A DNA stretch of 62,146 nt, the filler included, from Dugesia japonica (lineage: Eukaryota), in NCBI GenBank assembly GCA_001938525.1. It is 6 parts of 6 records of this genome, joined end to end, with 100 filler letters (N's around TTAATTAATTAA, not from the genome) between each part and the next. Parts side by side here need not be neighbours in the genome. Positions count along the whole stretch, not along the records: positions 1 to 9,796 come from MQRL01619697.1; 5 more parts are not named here. The stretch is one strand, 5' to 3'. The stretch's first letter is position 1, and every line of letters starts with the position of its first letter. The notes beneath the pieces are model-generated. The model had not been told where the DNA came from and ran no database searches. It was given only the letters and a program-made list of their open reading frames with translations. This document shows, in pieces, positions 1 through 9,796 of the stretch. The position numbers were made by a program, and so were the translations under genes.

Positions 1-144
1 CAGTTAATTTATTTTAAAATTACCACAACATAACATTTTTTAAAATACCACAACGTAATATATTTTAAGAATTTGTTTCTAAAATTTCACTCTCCTTTAT
101 ATATATATATACATCTCAATAAATTTGGCATTTTTGTAATAATT

Positions 145-3100
145 ATGTATAATAAAAAACCTCATGAAATAACTGTAATCAAGTTGATCAACTGGGGATT
201 AGTGTTCAGACCCCAAATAGTAATTCAAGAAATAGAAACAGGCGAGTTTTATCATAATCTCGAAGAAACATTCTTAAAAGAAATCGTTCCCCCCCAGTCT
301 CAAAAGTATATGCGGAAAAGATTGGCGACAATAAGGGTAATGGACCATCTGGAATTGGTGCAAACCGAAGCATCATGACTAACATTAGCCCGAATTGACG
401 AGATACTGGTAGCCACCCAGAAACTCCATGATACAATAAAGGAAGAAGTATACCTAAAGTTGACAAATCGATTGGTGGAATTATTGGAAGTTATAAAATT
501 GATCACTACTGAGGAAAGTGATTGGACAGGATGGTTACCAGTACATTACGATTGGGTAATATCCAATATGGGATTATCGGATTACCAAGTATGGTTGTAT
601 AACCCAGAAGGTAATATGAAACTCACACTCACAGGATTAATGGTAGAAGATCTAGAAACGGCACTCAATCAAGCAGGGTATCCATGTGTAACTGATAAAT
701 ATGTATGTACTCCAAGTGCAATAGTGGATTTTAATGCCAGAAAAAGACATATCTACGATTTTGGAGTAAAACCAGGAGAGGACATTGAAATCGTAGTATT
801 AGACAAACACCCTGGTATTGATTATGATATATGGGTAACGAAAACCGGCAGATCAGCATTGGAAATCATGGGAGAAATGGAATATCTGTATAAACAAGGT
901 GTAGAACCTATAAAAATAAAGATACTTTCCACAGTATTAGGAAAGAAAGATAAACTAACAAAGGAAGAAAGAAAACAGTTACTGATGACACGTAATGATT
1001 TTCTCAGACAACGACTAGAAAGAAGAGAAGAAAAATGCAACATGATAAGAATGCGACAGATGCCGTCAAGGGAAGTTATAGCAATGCGTAAAGTGGAGGA
1101 AATGGTTAAACGGGTGCAAATAGAAAAGGAAAAGTTACCCCGAGAAACATATTGGATGATAATGAACCGAATCTATGACATATATGACGGACTGGAAATA
1201 CCAGAAGAGATTGAGGATCAATGGCTCATGATTAAACAGAAATATGCCGAGGAAATATTAGCCACTACCAAAATTCAGGACTACAAATTATACCTGAATA
1301 TAGGTAAAAATGAACAAGACTTGACTAGATACAGTCGATTAAAGCCTCAAGGAATAACTATGATGGATCTAATGGATGCCCTTACCGATAAGTGGCGAGA
1401 GCATGGATTGAACATGGTACCACCATTTGTAAACGGCAAATTGATAGAAACAGACGATGAAGATAAACATATATTCCAATGTCATGCAAAGCCCGGAGAA
1501 ATATGTGAGTTAGATGTAGAGGAANAGTCACGGACGGTCCAATCACCAGATCTAGAAGAAAGAATGGAGGAAATAACGGAAATATATGTATCCGAAGTAT
1601 TGGCAGGAATTAAGGAACAAGTGAAAGAAAATCAGAAAATACAGAATATTGATAATCTACCAATAATTACTACAAAATCAGTTGAATTTCCAGAAGGAAC
1701 GCCGACAATACGGGATATTAGAAGTAACTACACGAAACACATAACTGAGGAATCTGCCACCTTTCACGCAATTAACGACTTATTACGAGTAACACGAAAA
1801 ACTCGACCGGCGGTGAATATCAAAGTATATTGGAAAATGATGAATAATCTACGGGATTTAGCCACCTATGGACAACTCAGCTTGTGGGCTCAGGCACAAT
1901 GGTGGAAAGAGAAGAACTTATACGAAGAGGAGGTACAAAATACTTCTGCTATATCTGATTACTCCATTCGAGTCAGTCTACTTAACAAAGAAAGGAGCAT
2001 AAAAAAGGTAGATATGATAACCTTGGAAGGATTAACTATCCATCATATTTTGAAACCTATAAAAAAATAGTTATGGCCTAAATCGATCAAGTCTTATAAA
2101 ATGCAGGCGGGAGCAACAATGATCATATTAGCTAAGAAAGAGGATCATATTTTCTTACATGATATCAAACCAGGAGAGGTTACTGATATNNNNNNNNNNN
2201 NNNNNNNNNNNNNNNNNNNNNNNNNNNNNNNNNNNNNNNNNNNNNNNNNNNNNNNNNNNNNNNNNNNNNNNNNNNNNNNNNNNNNNNNNNNNNNNNNNNN
2301 NNNNNNNNNNNNNNNNNNNNNNNNNNNNNNNNNNNNNNNNNNNNNNNNNNNNNNNNNNNNNNNNNNNNNNNNNNNNNNNNNNNNNNNNNNNNNNNNNNNN
2401 NNNNNNNNNNNNNNNNNAACCTCGGAAGATACCGCCAAACCCAAGTTATTACCATTTAAACAAGAATTTGTTGGTCTCTTCAGCTCCCCTCAAACCGAGC
2501 GGATAACAAAGATAATCTCTGATTTCTGTTATTTTCTGGGAAGGATACCCCAGGCAAAATTCTGGAAGGCATTTAATTTGCTAGCAGATCTGTCAAAATA
2601 TACCGAGATAGCAAAGGAGGAGTGTGCTAAGTGGGAATCTATACTCAAATCTTATACGAGTGCAGTTAAGACCAGTGCCAAAGGAGAAGATTTTCAGGTC
2701 ACCATCGAATATAGGACACCCAATAAAAAGCCTAGAAAAGAACCAGAATTGGCCTTAATGCATATACCACATTTTGACAGTACATCAGCAGCAGAATTAC
2801 AAGAAATTATAGAATCATTAGAAATAACTGATAAACAGAGCGGCTATATAATCACAAGTGACCATCTGAGGTTTCCTATCAAGTTTGAGGGAAAACAGCA
2901 CTTAATGAATATTGGGCTAAGACCAGGCGAAAATACCTTTCTCCAAATACAGAAACCCGAAGATTACACTCCAGGTCCGGTAAAATCTATGGAAGAAGTA
3001 TTGCAGCAACTGGAGGAATTATACGAACAAGAAATCAACAGTGGGAAATTGTTTGAAGAAGTCGACGATAAAACAGTCGAGATAAATATTGAGGCATGGG

Positions 3101-4215
3101 AAGCCAGTAAAACTTGGGGAAGTTTGGCACGAGTAGTAATGAAAATACTGCTAACTCTGGAAGAAAACTTGGCATTATTGAGACATGATAAAGTCATACA
3201 ATTAATCCTGAAGTTAAATCAGTTACGAGCTATAAGTCGTATGCCCGAAGATGTGATAAATGCAATATTAACTAAAGCGGTTCGAATGTTAACGAATGTG
3301 GCCGTCGACATAACAATCAAATTTNNNNNNNNNNNNNNNNNNNNNNNNNNNNNNNNNNNNNNNNNNNNNNNNNNNNNNNNNNNNNNNNNNNNNNNNNNAT
3401 TTATGAATCAACAACATAGCCTTGACAAAGAGGAAACCGGAACACAACCATTACTACAGGAAGACGACATAGTACTCTATTATAACCAAGTAATAGAACC
3501 AGACCAAATGAGATTGCCAATGAAATATATGGGTGTTTGGCCAGGAACTAAATTGAAAATTTACGTAACATCAAAAGATGAGGAGAAACGACGACCACGG
3601 GTCTCAGAAGAAAGATGGAAACAAGAAGCCAGAGAAGTAGTGGAATATTATTTAGAGGAAATACATCCACTGGTGTTCGCAAGAGCCAAACTCCCTAAAC
3701 AAGAACAGAAGAAACAACGAGTAGAGATGGTAGCAGCTCTGACCAACACACCAGTTAAAGATGAGAAGCCGGAAGACAACTTACCAAAGTTATTCGAATT
3801 GCTAGTGGGGGACAAACTAATAAAACCAGAAATCATACGGCGATCCAACATAGTCTTACAACAAGATCTGACAGTAGAAGACCTCAAGAAACTACAACGA
3901 TTAATTATGGCCATCAAAGTATCTCATGTATGGGATCCCATTCAATTCAATAAAACTTTGGTTAAATGGAGTAAAGCGAAAATAGGACAAGCCACTCCGT
4001 TGGAAATAAAATTCAGAATAATCGATCCGGAAGGAGATAAAACTACGGTTAAGATACCAGTATATAATACGGTAAAACACTTACGAGATAAGATACCATT
4101 TAAGCCAACCTACAAACTCCTGGACGATGATGGAATAGTCGAAGATACCACTTCAATTGGACTAATGAAAATCGATTTAGTTAAACCTAATACGTTATGG
4201 ATTTTTCCAGAGTGA
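145..4215 (+). pseudogene. Tandem-repeat protein with six ubiquitin-like (beta-grasp) domains separated by helical bundles
   Basis: One frame broken by stops at 376 and 2068 and by N gaps. Recurrent motifs are HIYDFGVKPGED / HIFQCHAKPGEI / HIFLHDIKPGEV / HLMNIGLRPGEN / MKYMGVWPGTK and YWMIMNRI / YWKMMNNL / FWKAFNLL, with a period of about 600-730 nt. Confidence 0.65.
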
Positions 4216-4934
4216 GGTACACTCACTCGGAAAGACGCAGATCCGTATAAGGCAGCAGATAAAACTCGACCGATAATGGGGGAGACCTCAGACATGTTAA
4301 AAGAATATAAACATCGAACAGAAATTGCAGCTAGTCAAATATTAAGACCGACAACAGATCAGTCCGGAAGTACATAAGTATCCCGAGAGATATAAAAAAC
4401 CCCTTAAACAAGCCAGGATTGGGAAGGTGAAATATTCGGATCACCATCAGCAGACGAGTTAGTGGAAAATGAAAACGAATTACAAATTACAAAGTACTCT
4501 CCGCCAGTTAGAAAAAGTGAAGAAATAAAGAGCAAAGAGCTGACAAGAAGTAAGAAATATGGCCCTAGCAAAGTCGACTTAGATGAGGAAGATATATTAG
4601 AAGAACAACCACTGTCACCAATATTGAGCAGAATAGCAAAATAATTGCCAGCTTCAGTTATGGACGATTTAATGGATACCAATCACCCCTTAGAAATGGA
4701 AAATCTTATAGAGACAGAAGAGGAGGAAGTGCCACCAAAACCANTGCGCACCCGAGTAGATGCGGAAACAATTACTGAACCTCGTAATAGAGGTTGACCA
4801 AGAACAAAACGCCCAGGAAATCCTGAGGAGGAAGAAGCATTAAAACAAAAACGATTAACAACATCAATAAACCATCAAACTGAGCGATTAGCAACAGTGT
4901 CACAGGAAAGATATGAAAATTCAACGGATGAGGA

Positions 4935-5345
4935 TATGCCTACAGAAGTAGTAATACGGCAACTATTACTAATGCTTTACCCGGAGCTAAAGATATGGAT
5001 TGGTAAATTTCAGCTATCTGATAGTCTCCGACCACTAGTCAAGGAAATAGAAGCAGCCATTAAGAAATTTCCTGCTACTAAAGGAACTAGTCATGGTACA
5101 AGAGACAATCTAGAAGGGGTAATGGATGAGTTGTTACAGGATTCACCAACAAAAGGAAGGATATAGTAGTATCGATAGCCCATTTAATCAATCAAGCACA
5201 CCTATCAATCGCTAGAAGTAAGCCGTCAAAAAACTTCATTCTTAGTAAATTACCGATAGTGGAACTCATACAAAATAAAATCATACCTTTGATAAAACAA
5301 CAAGGAGGATGGAAAAAATTTATTGAGTTCATATGCCCTAAGCCA
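4935..5345 (+). pseudogene. Bcl-2 family-like domain (one frameshift)
   Basis: BH1-like VMDELLQDSPTKGRI/VVSIAHL spans a frameshift at about 5163. BH2-like LIKQQGGWKKFIEF is at about 5287-5330 and BH3-like LSDSLRPLVKEIE lies upstream, all at Bcl-2-like spacing. Confidence 0.7.
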
Positions 5346-5460
5346 CAGCCATCACATAAAAATGTAACGAGAGTAATAAGGATTGTTCGGGAACAACTAA
5401 ATGAGATCGAGAATGGATGGACGCGTGGACCTCGAGGAAATTCTTGGCAAGCATTAACCA

Positions 5461-7400
5461 ATACTCTTGTTATTCCTAATGATGGGCAGAAGTGAAGCCA
5501 TTTTGGCCTATGACTGCGATGGGATGCAAGTTGAGAAGGAAGTCTTCTCATTAGTAGATACTGAGGAATGTCCAGACGCAAATCCGGAGAAAATTTCACT
5601 CCGTAATAATTCGGTGTACCACTTATATCAGGAGTCAGATTATTACAAGGCTCAAGTGCGTGAATGTACGGTAACCGTAAAGACATTTATATTTCATTGT
5701 GGTTACCACAGTAATACCTCGATAATCGATCCAGGAATCATAAGACATCCGGTACATCTAACGGGAAAACAATGCGATGAAGGATTCACAACTGGTAAAA
5801 TTACTATCAAACATGGAACTCAGGTTGTCGCTAAAAAAGAGCATGTAATTGATCAACCAATAGAAGCAGCCGGAAGTATATCGTCACATAAAGGTAATTG
5901 TGAATATGATACAACCACTATAAGTGGAAAAGTATGGCAATATGCGGTAGCAATCGAAACTTATACGGTGGAACTCAAAGAATACGAAGCATTTTTTGAC
6001 ACCCAGGATTGAACTATGAAAGGAAGGTCATACTGCAAAGCAGCAGATGGAGCATGTAATACAGGTTCGTCAACATTAACATATAAAGTAGATTACCAAG
6101 ATTGCAAGTTAGCACACTTAAAAGAAGCAGTGTTTGACGAATACCAAGGACAACGTGCTATAACACCTATTGATCACGATACAAAGGAGAGTAATCTGAA
6201 AGATAGGATAGATAATTTTAAAGAAACCATAAAATCAGGCCCGAGGTCATACAATCAACAATGGCACACCACACCTACGGTGCTAATGTCCTCAGAAAAG
6301 GATGAGACTATCCGATTAATCAAAGGAAACTCTATGTCTAAATGCGGGCAAATAGTATATAAGACAAATTATAAANGAATATTCGTATCGAAACATCGAA
6401 TAAAAACAGCCCAAGCCGCAGTGATGACCCAAGACTTCAAACTGCACTTATATGCTAATAATAAAATGGACAACTTATTCCACCGGATGCAAGATACTAT
6501 TGGATTGATGTACCATGACCTCATACAAAATGATTGCACCTTAAATAAGGAAATACTGAAGACGAAGTTAGCAATGGCAGTTACGAATCCAGATAGTGTA
6601 ACTCCGTTAATTCCGTTAGAAAAATGATAATTTGGTCGAGTGGTAGGTGAAGTAATGTACCTATACAAATGCAAAGCAATAGATGCGGAATTTTCATCTA
6701 ACNCAAAACCTTGTTACAATGAGATAGAAATCATCCACAACAATGAGAAACGTTATGTACAACCGATTACTCGAATAATATCACCATTGGGATATAAGTC
6801 AAATATCATAAATTGTTCTAATGTATTTGGACCACAATACATAATGACGGATGGTTCATGGATAAGATTTCCACAACGAATGGCAGTAGGAGTCGAACCA
6901 CGGAAATTCTCAATGTACCGATTAAATGGGGGGATGCAATTTACCCCGATCGATGTAAACAAAGGAGGAATTTAAAGCAGAGAAGATCTAGAGAAAGCAA
7001 GGGAATATATGTTGTTCCCAGTCCGAAGGATGCAGATCCTCTCAAATATCGTACAATTAACAAGTGGAACTAACATAGACGGACGTGTAAATTACGACGC
7101 ACTTTTGTCAGCAGATCATTTCCAGAAAGCCACTGAAAACGTCATGCGGAAAATGTGGGGAAGATTTATAAAATTTGGCCAAGCAATGGCAGGATTGTTG
7201 GGAGTCATGCTGATAATTTCAGTAGCACGAGTAGTAATTACCCAGTTGTTTGCATGTTTCGACATATACAAAAGGGAAAAGAAAGTGAATTGGAAACTGG
7301 TAACCAGAATATTCCCTTTCCTAGCAAAAACTATGGTGCTTAATAGTCACTCTAAAGATATCGACAGAGTAAAACGATTTATTCGGAAACTCGGACAAAT
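5461..7400 (+). pseudogene. env: Envelope glycoprotein, class III fusion type (chuvirus/Monjiviricetes G-like, herpes gB-related)
   Basis: Signal-like ILLLFLMMGRSEA followed by AYDC, a Cys-rich ectodomain with HCGYHS, FGRVVGEVMYLYKC, PCYNE..YVQPITRII..NCS and GGI(Y), then a TM segment FGQAMAGLLGVMLIISVARVVI. In-frame stops at 6010, 6625/6628 and 6973. Confidence 0.8.
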
Positions 7401-7984
7401 CAGAGGATCAGACAAACAGGTCATAATGCAACTCAGATTATTGTGTGAAGAAATGAGCAATGCTAAAAAGAAAATATCATATTTCAATCAATTCAAGGAA
7501 AGATTTAAGAACAAAAATGAAAGTAGTAGCGGAAGTGATGATGATAGAGGAGGAAGCAGTGGAGTACCACATGTACCTAGTTATAAAACTGCCATGGAAT
7601 ATGACGCAGAATTCAAAAGGCAACAATATGAAAAAGTCAGCAAAATGCAGCGACTGAGAAATGCATTGAAATTCGGAGGAAACGAAAATACTCCAGCACC
7701 AGCACAAATGTACTATAACGCTTACCCGCAACACGGTTGGCAACCTATGAGTCAAAAACCACCACAGGTATGGGCACTAGGTCCCAAATATAACACTCCT
7801 TATATAAATGCACCACAAGCCCCTAATATGGCATTATTAACAGAAAATAATTTGGCAACCATTGACCGAAGGGTTACTGAACAAAACTTGCACTCCCCAA
7901 ACAACCGGATCACTGAGGACGATAAATTAGAAACACACACTGTGTGTATGATGATTTCTCAACGAGCAAAATTATTACAAAAAA

Positions 7985-9710
7985 GAATTAAAATAGATGG
8001 GAGATGGGTGATAGCTATTATACAGGAGCAAGTAAGACGTTAGTCCACAAAACAGTATTAAAAGATTATCGACTACTCCGGATAACCATTACTAAAGGGG
8101 TTATCATCACCGCTTCAGGAGAAAAGATCTCACCTGTTGGGGTAGCAATATGTGCAGTGGAGAGTGACGGATTACGCCTGTGGCATAAGCTACAAATAAT
8201 GAACGAATTAACCTTTGACTGTCTTATAGGGTTGGATCTCTTACCACGCATCTGTCCAGAAGGAATTTTTGACTTAAGAAAACTGACGATACGGGAGAAT
8301 CATGAACACGAATATACACTAGTAGGGTATCATAAAACTAGAGTAATAACTAAACAAAAAAGTCCACAACAATGGAATCAGCCAACAACCAATCAACAAC
8401 CACGAAGAAGCAGAGGTGAGCAAAATCCCTCAAACTCCGATCCTGGGAAAACTACCGATACATCCACCATAATACAAGACGATTGGATCAGGTTCCAAGA
8501 ACGGGAACCAAGATGGAAAACCAAAAAACCACCTAACTCCAACCATAAAACTACAGACGTGGTATGTGCAAGTCTCAGTGGCGGACCAGTATTAACTATC
8601 ATGGGTAAAATCAATGGTAGACCTACAACTGCATTATTAGATACAGGAGCAACCATCTCGTTGTTATCAATAGAAGAAATTGCAATAACAGAATATAAAA
8701 ACATATTACCTACTAATACCACGGCAGATGTGGCGAACGGAAGCAGTTTCAAAATTTTCGGGGAACTAGCTTGCGAAGTAGAATATCAAGATAACAAAAT
8801 TAAACACAAAATGATAATAGTGGAAATGGCGGGACAATGCATCTTGGGTACGGATATTCTCCCAATTTTGATGAAAAACGGCATTCTAAACTTTTCCACT
8901 TTACAGTTGCAATCTTTGGAAGGTTATACACATGTTAAAGATCATGAAGTATTTACTACCNNNNNNNNNNNNNNNNNNNNNNNNNNNNNNNNNNNNNNNN
9001 NNNNNNNNNNNNNNNNNNNNNNNNNNNNNNNNNNNNNNNNNNNNNNNNNNNNNNNNNNNNNNNNNNTACCTACATCAGGAAGGTTAACTACGGTCAATAA
9101 AAGTGGAGAAGTACCGGTTAGCTTGGTTAATTTTACTGAAAAGGATATCAAGATCAAGCCAAATTCCAGAATAGGCACATTAACACCCATTGAACCAGAA
9201 ACCAATGAAATTGAGGAAATAGTCGTTGAACCAGTAATCGATAGAACATTAAAAGTGGAAACAGAAACACTATCGGATGATCAGAAACAGGCAATATTAC
9301 AATTATTGGAAGAATTTAGGGATATCTTTGCATGGACTGATGAAGAGCTAGGTATGTGTACCGCTACAATGCACACAATTCTGTTAACAGATGAAATCCC
9401 AAGCAAGCAGAAACCGTATGCCATGTCGATGGAGAAGAAGGAATTTGCGAATAAAGAAACAGCTAAATTAGTGAAAATCGGAGTAATAGAACCCAGTTGT
9501 TCACCATGGCAATCGCCTGTGAACCTCGTAGATAAAAAGGTTGGGACACAGCGATTCTGCATCGATTACAGACGATTAAACGCACAGACTAAAAAGGATA
9601 CATATCCACTACCAGATATCAACGAATTACTTCAATTACTGTGTAACGCCAAAATATTCACTACGTTGGATTTACGAAGCGGGTATTGGCAAATACAAAT
9701 TAAACCCGAA
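7985..9710 (+). pseudogene. pol: pol: two retropepsin proteases, dUTPase-like region, N-terminal half of reverse transcriptase
   Basis: PR1 is RIKIDGRWVIAI/(D)TGASKTLV...DCLIGLDLL with a frameshift at the catalytic Asp. PR2 is ALLDTGATISLL...ILGTDIL. The dUTPase-like stretch is SGEVPVSLVNFTEKDIKIKPNSRIGTL. RT motifs: SPWQSPVNLVDKK, RFCIDYRRLN, TYPLPDI, LDLRSGYWQI. Confidence 0.92.
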
Positions 9711-9796
9711 AGAAAATTAAATACTAAAGAAAATGGGATAAACCCGAGAATTTTTGATAATTTTTGAAAATTTTTTCTTCTCAAATCGTAACAAAA

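What the first reader, a model, noticed from the sequence alone, without database searches (positions are those of the whole stretch)
583..4212. Six tandem diverged ubiquitin-like plus helical-bundle modules
Seen: units start near 583, 1282, 1960, 2692, 3304 and 4000. Each follows a Trp-containing helical segment and runs D(Y/F)x(V/L/I) strand, helix, then H(I/L)xxxG(V/L)xPGE; most then continue with an E(L/I)Y helix. Unit 6 (IKFRIIDPEGDKTTVKIPVYNTVKHLRDKI..YKLL..IVEDTTSIG) follows the ubiquitin pattern closely. No C-terminal GG is present, so these would be integral UBL domains. Speculation: UBL plus three-helix bundle recalls BAG1, a Bcl-2/Hsp70 partner, which would pair functionally with the adjacent Bcl-2 domain. 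However, the BAG RK motif is not evident.
Basis: partly seen in the sequence, partly recalled or inferred. Interest (0 to 1): 0.8.

Follow-up and report, generated by a model that had tools for sequence, protein, structure and literature searches.

The report
Tandem ubiquitin-like modules in a retroelement ORF
The first large reading frame of a decayed, virus-like retroelement encodes an orphan protein built from four to six ~230-residue repeats, each a helical segment plus a probable ubiquitin-fold domain; nothing like it was found in the protein databases searched.

Summary
The repeat is real, but fewer units are supported than claimed. Frame 1 of 34-4212 is one reading frame of about 1,390 codons. 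It is broken by in-frame stops at 376 and 2068 and by two assembly gaps.

- **Repeat support:** modules 1-4 are significantly alike pairwise (z 7-20, 0/300 shuffles). Module 5 is marginal. Module 6 rests on pattern and spacing only.
- **Module anatomy:** a Trp-containing helical segment, then an 80-97-aa beta-rich segment ending H(I/L)xxxGxxPGE, then an E(L/I)Y helix and a charged linker.
- **Fold:** AlphaFold2 of module 1's beta segment (pLDDT 60, pTM 0.51) gives the ubiquitin strand-helix order. The 50 best PDB matches shown by Foldseek are all ubiquitin, UBL, UBX, ISG15 or NEDD8. No GG dipeptide occurs anywhere. Integral ubiquitin-like domains are supported at moderate confidence.
- **BAG1 idea:** not supported. 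No BAG domain was detected.
- **Homologues:** none in Pfam, PDB sequences or 1.84 billion representative proteins.
- **Context:** ORF1 sits at the 5' end of a decayed Ty3/gypsy-like element. A Bcl-2-like remnant and a Monjiviricetes-type G glycoprotein lie upstream of, and in frame with, protease-RT. One metagenomic relative (L001) shares this order.

The likely role, a non-enzymatic multivalent scaffold or adaptor, is inferred, not shown.

The parts
34..375 (+). N-terminal stretch of ORF1 in frame 1 (first ATG at 145), separated from the rest by an in-frame TGA at 376-378. It is not detectably a repeat unit.
   Evidence: Searches give the frame and stops. Searches show no profile match above shuffles. 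One search shows no Pfam hit.
412..1110 (+). Module 1: helical segment 412-576, ubiquitin-like beta segment 577-816 (HIYDFGVKPGE at 748-780), then an E..Y helix and a Lys/Arg/Glu-rich linker 817-1110.
   Evidence: Searches give the motifs. One search gives z 7.8-12.6 against units 2-4. Searches give the AF2 model and its ubiquitin-fold matches.
1111..1788 (+). Module 2: YW...N.(I/L).D(I/L)...W helices 1111-1275, beta segment 1276-1536 (one N at 1525), then the E(I)Y helix and linker.
   Evidence: One search gives z 7.8-19.6 against units 1, 3 and 4.
1789..2189 (+). Module 3, left part: YW helices 1789-1953 and beta segment 1954-2187. The segment is interrupted by an in-frame TAG at 2068-2070 and runs into gap 1.
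   Evidence: One search gives z 6.9-19.6. One search shows that 2071-2187 matches the unit profile at 8.5 bits, above all shuffles.
2190..2417 (.). Assembly gap 1 (228 N). It should hold module 3's post-UBL helix and linker. The estimated length fits the repeat phase.
2419..3138 (+). End of the module 3 linker (2419-2520) and module 4: FW helices 2521-2685, beta segment 2686-2976 (the longest, with an insert), and the EELY helix and linker 2977-3138.
   Evidence: The AF2 model of 2419-3324 had low confidence.
3139..3834 (+). Module 5 (marginal): helices 3139-3303, first strand 3304-3324, gap 2 (3325-3398), rest of the beta segment 3400-3594 (..GVWPGT), and the VEYY helix and linker 3595-3834.
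   Evidence: One search gives 9.6 bits in register, above 1,600 shuffles. One search shows the pairwise scores are not significant. One search shows the beta-segment profile alone fails. One search covers the gap frames.
3835..4212 (+). Module 6 (putative): Trp-containing helices 3835-3999 and a 71-aa ubiquitin-pattern segment 4000-4212. It ends at the TGA at 4213-4215.
   Evidence: Only pattern and spacing support it: the anchor lies 232 aa after unit 5's. There is no statistical support and no Pfam hit.
4216..4797 (+). Acid-rich, coding-like continuation of frame 1 with five further in-frame stops (4375, 4393, 4405, 4642, 4795). It links ORF1 to the Bcl-2-like region.
   Evidence: Searches show no Pfam hits.
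4798..5457 (+). Bcl-2-like remnant: frame 1 to about 5163, then frame 3 from 5130 to 5492 carrying a GGW (BH2-like) motif. Motif-level evidence only.
   Evidence: One search gives the translations. One search shows no Pfam hit. One search shows 55% identity over 22 aa to L001. One search shows that L001's region matches Bcl-xL chains over BH2 only, at E 0.2-1.6.
5458..8040 (+). Class III fusion glycoprotein (Pfam Monjiviricetes_fusion) in four frame-1 pieces split by stops at 6010, 6625/6628 and 6973. The transmembrane segment is at about 7165-7266, followed by a cytoplasmic tail.
   Evidence: One search gives E 2.7e-29, 1.4e-14, 8.3e-14 and 8.1e-17, colinear with the profile. locates the hydrophobic stretch. 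Searches show similarity to L001.
7992..9764 (+). Frame-3 pol: a degenerate protease-like stretch, the retropepsin (DTGA at 8640), gap 8961-9066, a dUTPase-like stretch and the start of RT. It is cut off by the edge of the piece.
   Evidence: One search shows the closest named relatives are Ty3/gypsy-type polyproteins.

Best explanation
Positions 34-4212 hold one reading frame of about 1,390 codons (ORF1). It lies at the 5' end of a decayed endogenous Ty3/gypsy-like retroelement.

**Shown**
- ORF1 is a non-enzymatic repeat protein made by ancient internal duplication of a module of about 230 residues.
- Each module has a conserved helical segment ((Y/F)W..N.L.DL ... W ... Y), a beta-rich domain of 80-97 residues, an E(L/I)Y helix and a charged linker.
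- Four modules are certain, a fifth is probable and a sixth is possible.

**Moderately supported**
- The beta-rich domain is an integral ubiquitin-fold (beta-grasp) domain. It cannot be conjugated, because no GG dipeptide is present.

**Inferred mechanism**
- The array works as a multivalent scaffold or adaptor. Its UBL faces would engage host proteins that read ubiquitin-like surfaces, such as proteasome or shuttle receptors, p97-type or ESCRT-type factors. Alternatively they would polymerise head-to-tail as other beta-grasp modules do.
- The helical segments would act as spacers or an assembly surface.
- In this way the array would serve assembly, trafficking or host manipulation for an element that also carries a Bcl-2-like domain and a viral G fusion protein.

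**State of this copy:** it is not functional as it stands. There are in-frame stops at 376 and 2068 in ORF1, and many more stops and frame changes downstream.
For: **One frame:**. The stop at 2068 lies inside a repeat unit.

**Repeat:** BLASTP registers are 232 aa apart. Pairwise z is 6.9-19.6 with 0/300 shuffles for units 1-4. The alignment shows conserved motifs. Unit 5 scores 9.6 bits and unit 3b 8.5 bits, both above 1,600 shuffles.

**Fold:** the AF2 model of 577-816 has pLDDT 60.2 and pTM 0.51 with ubiquitin element order. The Foldseek top 50 in the PDB are all ubiquitin-superfamily, TM 0.53-0.73. BFVD gives mostly viral UBL and CIDE-N domains. No GG is present.

**Non-enzymatic and orphan:** there are no Pfam hits above noise. 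There are no PDB sequence hits. phmmer found 0 hits in 1.84 billion representatives and the word-indexed search found 0.

**Belongs to the element**
- It is on the same strand and in the same frame as the downstream G gene, and it is decayed like the G gene.
- The relative L001 also carries a long Pfam-less ORF directly upstream of a BH2-like motif, G, PR and RT.
- In L001 all of these lie in a single frame.
Against: - The fold rests on one model of modest confidence built from 7 paralogous rows. No Foldseek E-value is 1e-3 or better, and no shuffled-sequence control could be run.
- The larger model covering unit 4 failed (pLDDT 41).
- No ubiquitin-family sequence profile matches any unit.
- Units 5 and 6 are weakly supported or unsupported.
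- L001's ORF1 shows no detectable similarity to this ORF1. Conservation of the module across the element family is therefore not shown, and independent acquisition cannot be excluded.
- There is no evidence on expression, partners or function.
- Only 144 nt lie upstream of the first ATG, so whether a separate gag lies further 5' is unknown.
Confidence: 0.5

Rival explanations
1. ORF1 is the element's Gag-equivalent. It would be a structural assembly protein in which the beta-grasp domains act as homotypic polymerisation modules (as PB1, CIDE-N or DCX domains do), not as ubiquitin mimics. The charged linkers would contact nucleic acid.
For: - No recognisable capsid or zinc-knuckle domain exists anywhere in the window or in L001.
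- ORF1 is the 5'-most ORF.
- The linkers are rich in Lys, Arg and Glu.
- CIDE-N domains are among the fold matches.
Against: - ORF1 is not adjacent to the protease. A Bcl-2-like region and the whole G gene intervene.
- A six-fold repeat is unlike any known Gag.
- There is no similarity between the ORF1s of two elements whose G and pol are 34-54% identical.
- A gag further upstream cannot be excluded.
Confidence: 0.2
2. The beta-rich segments are not ubiquitin-fold. The module would be a novel alpha/beta repeat, and the AF2 model reflects the predictor's bias towards a very common small fold.
For: - The model has pLDDT of only 60, with 19 of 80 residues below 50.
- The unit 4 model failed.
- No UBL sequence profile matches.
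- Foldseek E-values are only 4e-3 to 3e-2.
Against: - All five AF2 models scored similarly (52.8-60.2) and pTM is 0.51.
- All 50 top PDB matches shown belong to one superfamily and cover the full length.
- The conserved C-terminal motif (hydrophobic..G..PGE.hydrophobic strand) and the strand-strand-helix start fit the generic beta-grasp pattern. This last point is inference from the sequence.
Confidence: 0.2
3. One reading: BAG1-like co-chaperone modules (UBL plus a three-helix BAG domain) that bind Hsp70 and cooperate with the adjacent Bcl-2-like domain.
For: - The BAG1 UBL (1wxv) is among the fold matches, at rank 15 with TMq 0.73.
- A Bcl-2-like motif lies downstream.
Against: - No BAG domain is found by Pfam in any piece or helical segment or by the PDB profile search.
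- BAG1's UBL is no better a match than dozens of other UBLs.
- The conserved helices precede each UBL.
- The Bcl-2 assignment is itself unproven.
Confidence: 0.05
4. ORF1 is an unrelated host gene or pseudogene that merely lies next to the retroelement.
For: - There is no sequence similarity to L001's ORF1.
- The stretch just upstream of the first ATG is AT-rich with a TATA-like run.
Against: - It has the same strand and frame as the element's G gene, with coding-like sequence running continuously from 4216 to the Bcl-2-like region.
- It has no introns over 4 kb.
- It is as decayed as the rest of the element.
- L001 has a long ORF in the equivalent position and frame.
- It has no homologue among 1.84 billion proteins, which would be unusual for a host gene.
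Confidence: 0.05

Closest known systems
Proteins with tandem integral ubiquitin-like domains (USP7 HUBL array, ISG15/FAT10 di-UBLs, Rad23/Dsk2/ubiquilin/Ddi1-type UBL adaptors)
   Same: - A ubiquitin-fold domain is used as a built-in module. ISG15, Dsk2, ubiquilin and UBX domains are among the best fold matches.
- Several UBLs occur in one chain.
   Different: - There is no sequence-profile similarity to any of them.
- Each UBL is separated by about 130-150 residues of conserved helices and charged linker.
- There is no GG (unlike the conjugatable ISG15 and FAT10), no UBA/UIM domain and no catalytic domain.
- It is encoded by a retroelement.
BAG1 (UBL plus BAG domain, an Hsp70 and Bcl-2 partner)
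   Same: - The UBL fold is shared (1wxv).
- It has helical neighbours.
- A Bcl-2-like motif lies nearby in the same frame.
   Different: - No BAG domain was detected.
- The architecture is repeated.
- The conserved helices are N-terminal to each UBL.
Env-carrying LTR retroelements that captured a viral fusion protein (errantiviruses; the mosquito Pao element 'Anakin' with a chuvirus G; PMC7642597, PMC10084718, PMC13524379)
   Same: A retroelement with retropepsin and RT also carries a Monjiviricetes-type class III G.
   Different: - Here G lies upstream of PR-RT and in frame with it, not downstream of pol.
- The RT relatives are Ty3/gypsy-type. PMC10084718 reports no clear Gypsy capture of a Jingchuvirales G.
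- This element has an extra 5' poly-UBL ORF and a Bcl-2-like region.
Retroviral and LTR-retrotransposon Gag
   Same: It is the 5'-proximal, non-enzymatic ORF of the element.
   Different: - It has no capsid or zinc-knuckle signature.
- It is not adjacent to the protease.
- It has a six-fold repeat architecture.

Membership tests
Ubiquitin-like (beta-grasp) superfold, integral UBL domain | Element order b1-b2-a1-b3-b4-(3-10)-b5 in about 75-95 residues, superposable on ubiquitin | tested here: met
   Tested for unit 1 only, at moderate confidence. The AF2 model has pLDDT 60.2 and pTM 0.51. The top 50 PDB matches are all ubiquitin-superfamily with TM 0.53-0.73. BFVD gives mostly UBL and CIDE-N domains.
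Ubiquitin-like (beta-grasp) superfold, integral UBL domain | The same fold in units 2-6 | tested here: inconclusive
   The unit 4 model had pLDDT 41. Units 2-4 are inferred by homology to unit 1.
Ubiquitin family by sequence (Pfam ubiquitin and related UBL profiles) | A significant match to a curated UBL profile | tested here: not met
   No UBL family matched any piece or any isolated unit, even at E up to 10. The only UBL-named match (PF25565, E 0.13) fell on one helical segment and is not significant.
Conjugatable ubiquitin-like modifiers | A C-terminal Gly-Gly exposed or cleavable after the fold | tested here: not met
   No GG dipeptide occurs in the 1,394 codons.
BAG-domain co-chaperones (BAG1) | A BAG three-helix-bundle domain C-terminal to the UBL | tested here: not met
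   Pfam scans of the pieces and helical segments and a PDB profile search give no BAG match.
BAG-domain co-chaperones (BAG1) | Binding to the Hsp70 nucleotide-binding domain | not testable with these tools
   This needs a binding assay or a confident complex model.
Internal tandem repeat (six units) | Each unit significantly similar to the others | tested here: inconclusive
   Units 1-4 pass, with z 6.9-19.6. Unit 5 is marginal. Unit 6 fails.
LTR-retroelement Gag | A capsid-like domain and/or a CCHC zinc knuckle, directly upstream of the protease | tested here: not met
   No such Pfam hits were found. The Bcl-2-like region and G lie between ORF1 and the protease.
Ty3/gypsy-like env-carrying retroelement (context) | Retropepsin with D(T/S)G and an RT of Ty3/gypsy type | tested here: met
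   Pfam finds protease and RVT_1. DTGA lies at 8640. Named relatives are Ty3/gypsy polyproteins.
Ty3/gypsy-like env-carrying retroelement (context) | LTRs, and the gene order gag-pol-env | tested here: not met
   No long direct repeat lies in the window, which is cut at both ends. G precedes PR-RT and is in frame with it, both here and in L001.
Bcl-2 family (neighbouring region 4798-5457) | A BH1-BH2 helical fold recognised by profile | tested here: inconclusive
   There is no Pfam hit. Bcl-xL chains match L001's region over BH2 only, at E 0.2-1.6. The motif is conserved between the window and L001.

The most novel reading that the evidence does not exclude
This window and L001 would represent an undescribed lineage of Ty3/gypsy-like endogenous retroviruses that is expressed as one long polyprotein.
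- The proposed order is a poly-UBL scaffold, a Bcl-2-like domain, an internal signal peptide, a captured mononegavirus-type G, a membrane-anchored tail, then PR-RT.
- In this lineage the tandem integral UBLs would replace Gag functions. They would recruit ubiquitin-reading host machinery (ESCRT, p97 or proteasome factors) for budding or trafficking.
- The Bcl-2-like domain would keep the cell alive.
Probability: 0.15. Interest if true: 0.85.

Novelty: new variant of a known kind. Interest (0 to 1): 0.6.

Why it matters
If the modules are true integral UBLs, this is a retroelement that builds ubiquitin mimicry into its own 5' protein six times over. It sits beside an apoptosis-regulator-like domain and a fusion glycoprotein captured from a negative-strand RNA virus. 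Together these would form an unusual toolkit for an invertebrate endogenous retrovirus.

The element's gene order, with G upstream of and in frame with protease-RT, is not among the env-carrying retroelements described in the papers consulted. It would widen the known ways in which retrotransposons became virus-like.

The ORF1 sequence is an orphan: 0 hits in 1.84 billion proteins. Its fold assignment is therefore also a small test of what can be learned from internal paralogues alone.

Tried and rejected
- **Homologue searches for ORF1:** the word-indexed search of 5.8 billion proteins and exhaustive phmmer against 1.84 billion representatives returned nothing. Neither did scans of viral and metagenome contigs with ORF1 or with the conserved G-TM probe. 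No outside alignment could therefore be built.
- **PDB sequence searches:** the pieces and profiles gave only noise. The noise included staphylokinase at E 0.05-0.3 and HIP12 at E 0.004. I do not treat these as evidence.
- **AF2 of 2419-3324** with a 4-row alignment gave pLDDT 41 and was unusable. I did not fold-search it.
- **Search with L001's G-containing ORF** found only itself.
- **Comparison with L001's ORF1:** BLASTP, HMM and hhalign comparisons with this ORF1 showed no significant similarity. My visual impression of UBL-like stretches in L001's ORF1 is unsupported.
- **N-terminal stretch 34-375 as a seventh unit:** rejected on statistics.
- **Separate genes at 460-2070 and 2101-4215:** rejected, because the stop at 2068 lies inside a repeat unit.
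- **DNA-level repeats or LTRs:** none found.
- **Literature:** searches found no retroelement with a UBL-repeat ORF or a Bcl-2 homologue.


Full report
**1. What the window is**

All long reading frames lie on the + strand. Frame 1 is open from 34 to 4212 apart from in-frame stops at 376 (TGA) and 2068 (TAG), and it ends at 4213 (TGA).

Frame 1 then continues as coding-like, acid-rich sequence with five more stops, as far as a Bcl-2-like remnant.

From 5458 to about 7350, frame 1 encodes a class III fusion glycoprotein. Four consecutive pieces match Pfam Monjiviricetes_fusion colinearly (E 2.7e-29, 1.4e-14, 8.3e-14, 8.1e-17). They are split by stops at 6010, 6625/6628 and 6973. A transmembrane stretch at about 7165-7266 and a long tail follow.

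Frame 3 from 7992 encodes a retropepsin (DTGA at 8640) and the start of a reverse transcriptase. Its named relatives are Ty3/gypsy-type polyproteins of invertebrates.

The window is therefore a decayed copy of a retrovirus-like element, and the finding is its 5' reading frame.

**2. The gaps**

At both gaps only frame 1 is open on either side.

- **Gap 1:** with the written length (228 N) the frame is kept.
  - It separates unit 3's ...KPGE motif from the run-up to unit 4's FW helix.
  - The distance through it is 130 aa, against 126 and 112 aa for the same interval elsewhere.
- **Gap 2:** with the written length (74 N, which together with base 3399 makes 25 codons) the frame is also kept.
  - It splits unit 5's beta segment.
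  - The first-strand-to-PG distance is 78 aa, against 64-78 elsewhere.

The flanks are thus consistent with one continuous frame and roughly correct gap lengths. This is not proof. I did not try to fill either gap.

**3. Is the repeat real?**

- BLASTP aligns piece 2419-3324 to three registers of piece 379-2067 that lie 232 aa apart.
- Smith-Waterman scores for all six pairs among units 1-4 are 6.9-19.6 standard deviations above shuffles, with 0 of 300 shuffles reaching them.
- The alignment shows a shared module:
  - (Y/F)W..N.L.DL, a second Trp about 20 residues on, then D(Y/F).(V/L/I) opening the beta segment;
  - a ...L.L.G(I/L)...DL..AL helix region;
  - H(I/L)...G..PGE;
  - an E(L/I)Y helix and a charged linker.
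- Unit 5 is marginal.
  - A whole-unit profile scores its post-gap half 9.6 bits in register, above all 1,600 shuffles.
  - Its pairwise scores are not significant.
  - A profile limited to the pre-helix plus beta segment misses it.
- Unit 6 and the N-terminal stretch 34-375 have no statistical support. Unit 6 is supported only by its ubiquitin-like residue pattern and its position one period (232 aa) after unit 5.
- No DNA-level repeat exists, so the duplication is old.
- The stop at 2068 falls inside unit 3's beta segment. It is a disruption, not a gene boundary.

**4. Is the beta segment ubiquitin-like?**

Sequence methods give no support. No UBL family matches any unit or piece in Pfam, even at E up to 10. 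There is no significant PDB sequence match.

Structure prediction of 2419-3324 with four paralogous rows failed (pLDDT 41).

Prediction of the compact unit 1 segment (577-816) with seven paralogous rows gave pLDDT 60.2 and pTM 0.51. The five models scored 52.8-60.2. The element order was strand, strand, helix, two short strands, short helix, strand.

- Foldseek against the PDB returned, in its top 50, only ubiquitin, designed ubiquitin variants, ISG15, NEDD8, UBX and UBL domains. These included Dsk2, ubiquilin, UBL4A and BAG1. They cover 72-88 columns at TM 0.53-0.73.
- BFVD returned mostly viral UBL proteins and CIDE-N domains.
- E-values are only 4e-3 to 3e-2 and the model is of modest confidence. 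I rate the beta-grasp assignment as moderately supported for unit 1, inherited by homology for units 2-4, and open for units 5 and 6.
- No GG dipeptide occurs anywhere in ORF1, so these would be integral domains, not conjugatable ones.

**5. The helical part and the BAG1 idea**

The helices are conserved, but their fold is not established.

- In the low-confidence model they appear as two long helices before each beta segment and one after it.
- Pfam scans of the helical segments and a PDB profile search gave no BAG match. They returned only noise-level hits: HIP12 at E 0.004, and Spectrin_7 at E 0.096.
- BAG1's UBL is merely one of many equivalent fold matches.
- The BAG1 analogy is therefore not supported.

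The neighbouring 'Bcl-2 domain' is itself only motif-level.

- It has no Pfam hit.
- The matching region of L001 hits about 50 Bcl-xL chains, but only across BH2 and at E 0.2-1.6.
- The GGW motif region is 55% identical over 22 aa between the two elements.

**6. Relatives and context**

ORF1 has no detectable homologue: 0 hits at E of 1e-3 or better in 1.84 billion representative proteins. The word-indexed search and the contig scans also returned nothing.

The pol region did find one informative relative, P0001, on an 8.2-kb JGI metagenome contig (L001).

- L001 is colinear with the window from the BH2-like motif onwards. Identities are:
  - G: 34-45%
  - TM and tail: 54%
  - protease: 40%
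  - RT: 46%
- In L001 the whole 8 kb is a single frame with only three TAG interruptions.
- In L001 the C-terminal part of G, the TM segment, the tail, protease and RT form one uninterrupted 1,023-aa ORF.
- The position of G upstream of and in frame with PR-RT is therefore a family trait and not a local rearrangement.
- L001 also has a long Pfam-less ORF (up to 934 aa, possibly cut by the contig edge) directly upstream in the same frame. It shows no significant similarity to the window's ORF1 by BLASTP, HMM or hhalign.
- ORF1 is thus either very fast-evolving or was acquired separately in each lineage.
- Papers on chuvirus-type G genes in arthropod genomes report capture by a Pao element and no clear Gypsy capture (PMC7642597, PMC10084718).
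- I found no report of a UBL-repeat or Bcl-2-like gene in a retroelement.

**7. How it most likely works**

*Shown:* ORF1 is a repeat protein with no enzymatic signature. It lies at the 5' end of the element, in the same frame as the downstream genes, and it is inactivated in this copy.

*Moderately supported:* the repeated beta domain has the ubiquitin fold.

*Inferred:* an array of four to six non-cleavable UBLs spaced by helices and charged linkers is best read as a multivalent adaptor or scaffold. There are two versions of this reading.

- It presents UBL surfaces to host factors that recognise ubiquitin-like domains.
- It polymerises through beta-grasp contacts as an assembly protein standing in for Gag.

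An internal signal peptide after the Bcl-2-like region would leave ORF1 and that region cytosolic, with G in the lumen and the tail-PR-RT on the cytosolic side. This topology is an inference from the sequence order, not a result. I cannot separate the adaptor and assembly versions with the data at hand.

**8. Verdict**

- The UBL reading is moderately supported and the BAG1 reading is not.
- The protein is an orphan in an unusual retroelement. I class it as a new variant of a known kind (integral UBL repeat proteins) in a context that appears undescribed.

Noticed in passing
window 5130-9764; L001 1-8154: The element's gene order is unusual. A Monjiviricetes-type G lies upstream of, and in the same frame as, protease-RT. 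This is conserved between the window and the metagenomic relative L001, where G C-terminus, TM, tail, PR and RT form one 1,023-aa ORF and the whole 8 kb is a single frame with three TAG interruptions. The papers consulted describe G capture only by a Pao element.
   Followed up: partly
window 4798-5492; L001 3050-3500: A Bcl-2-like remnant lies just upstream of the G signal peptide. A GGW (BH2-like) motif is conserved between the two elements. There is no Pfam hit. L001's region matches about 50 Bcl-xL chains over BH2 only, at E 0.2-1.6. In the window the region changes frame near 5165.
   Followed up: partly
window 376, 2068, 4213-4795, 5164-5455, 6010, 6625-6628, 6973, ~8000: The copy is decayed throughout. 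It has at least a dozen in-frame stops and frame changes near 5165, 5458 and 8000. In L001 the junction matching the window's ~8000 frame change lies in one frame.
   Followed up: yes
window 1-144: An AT-rich leader lies upstream of the first ATG (145). It has a ~22-nt tandem duplication (about 13-35 and 38-58), a TATATATATATA run at about 99-111 and AATAAA at 119-124. It could be a promoter or the edge of an LTR. The window ends too soon to tell.
   Followed up: no
window 8020-8300 and 8600-8870: There are two protease-like stretches. A degenerate one lies just after the frame change, and the DTGA retropepsin lies downstream (one search reports two stretches; one search aligns both to L001's single protease).
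   Followed up: no
window 9069-9190: A weak dUTPase-like match (E 0.018) lies between the protease and RT, just after gap 8961-9066. One pol relative (P0017) carries the same Pfam domain.
   Followed up: no
L001 77-364 (ORF1 residues 25-120): The N-terminus of L001's ORF1 gives a weak phmmer match to a 110-aa chain named Cell death protein 4, 8jo0_H (E 0.1). It is not significant. It is noted only because a Bcl-2-like region lies downstream.
   Followed up: no
L001 5-2806: L001's ORF1 contains stretches that look ubiquitin-like by eye. It shows no internal repeat and no significant similarity to the window's modules. Its fold was not tested.
   Followed up: partly
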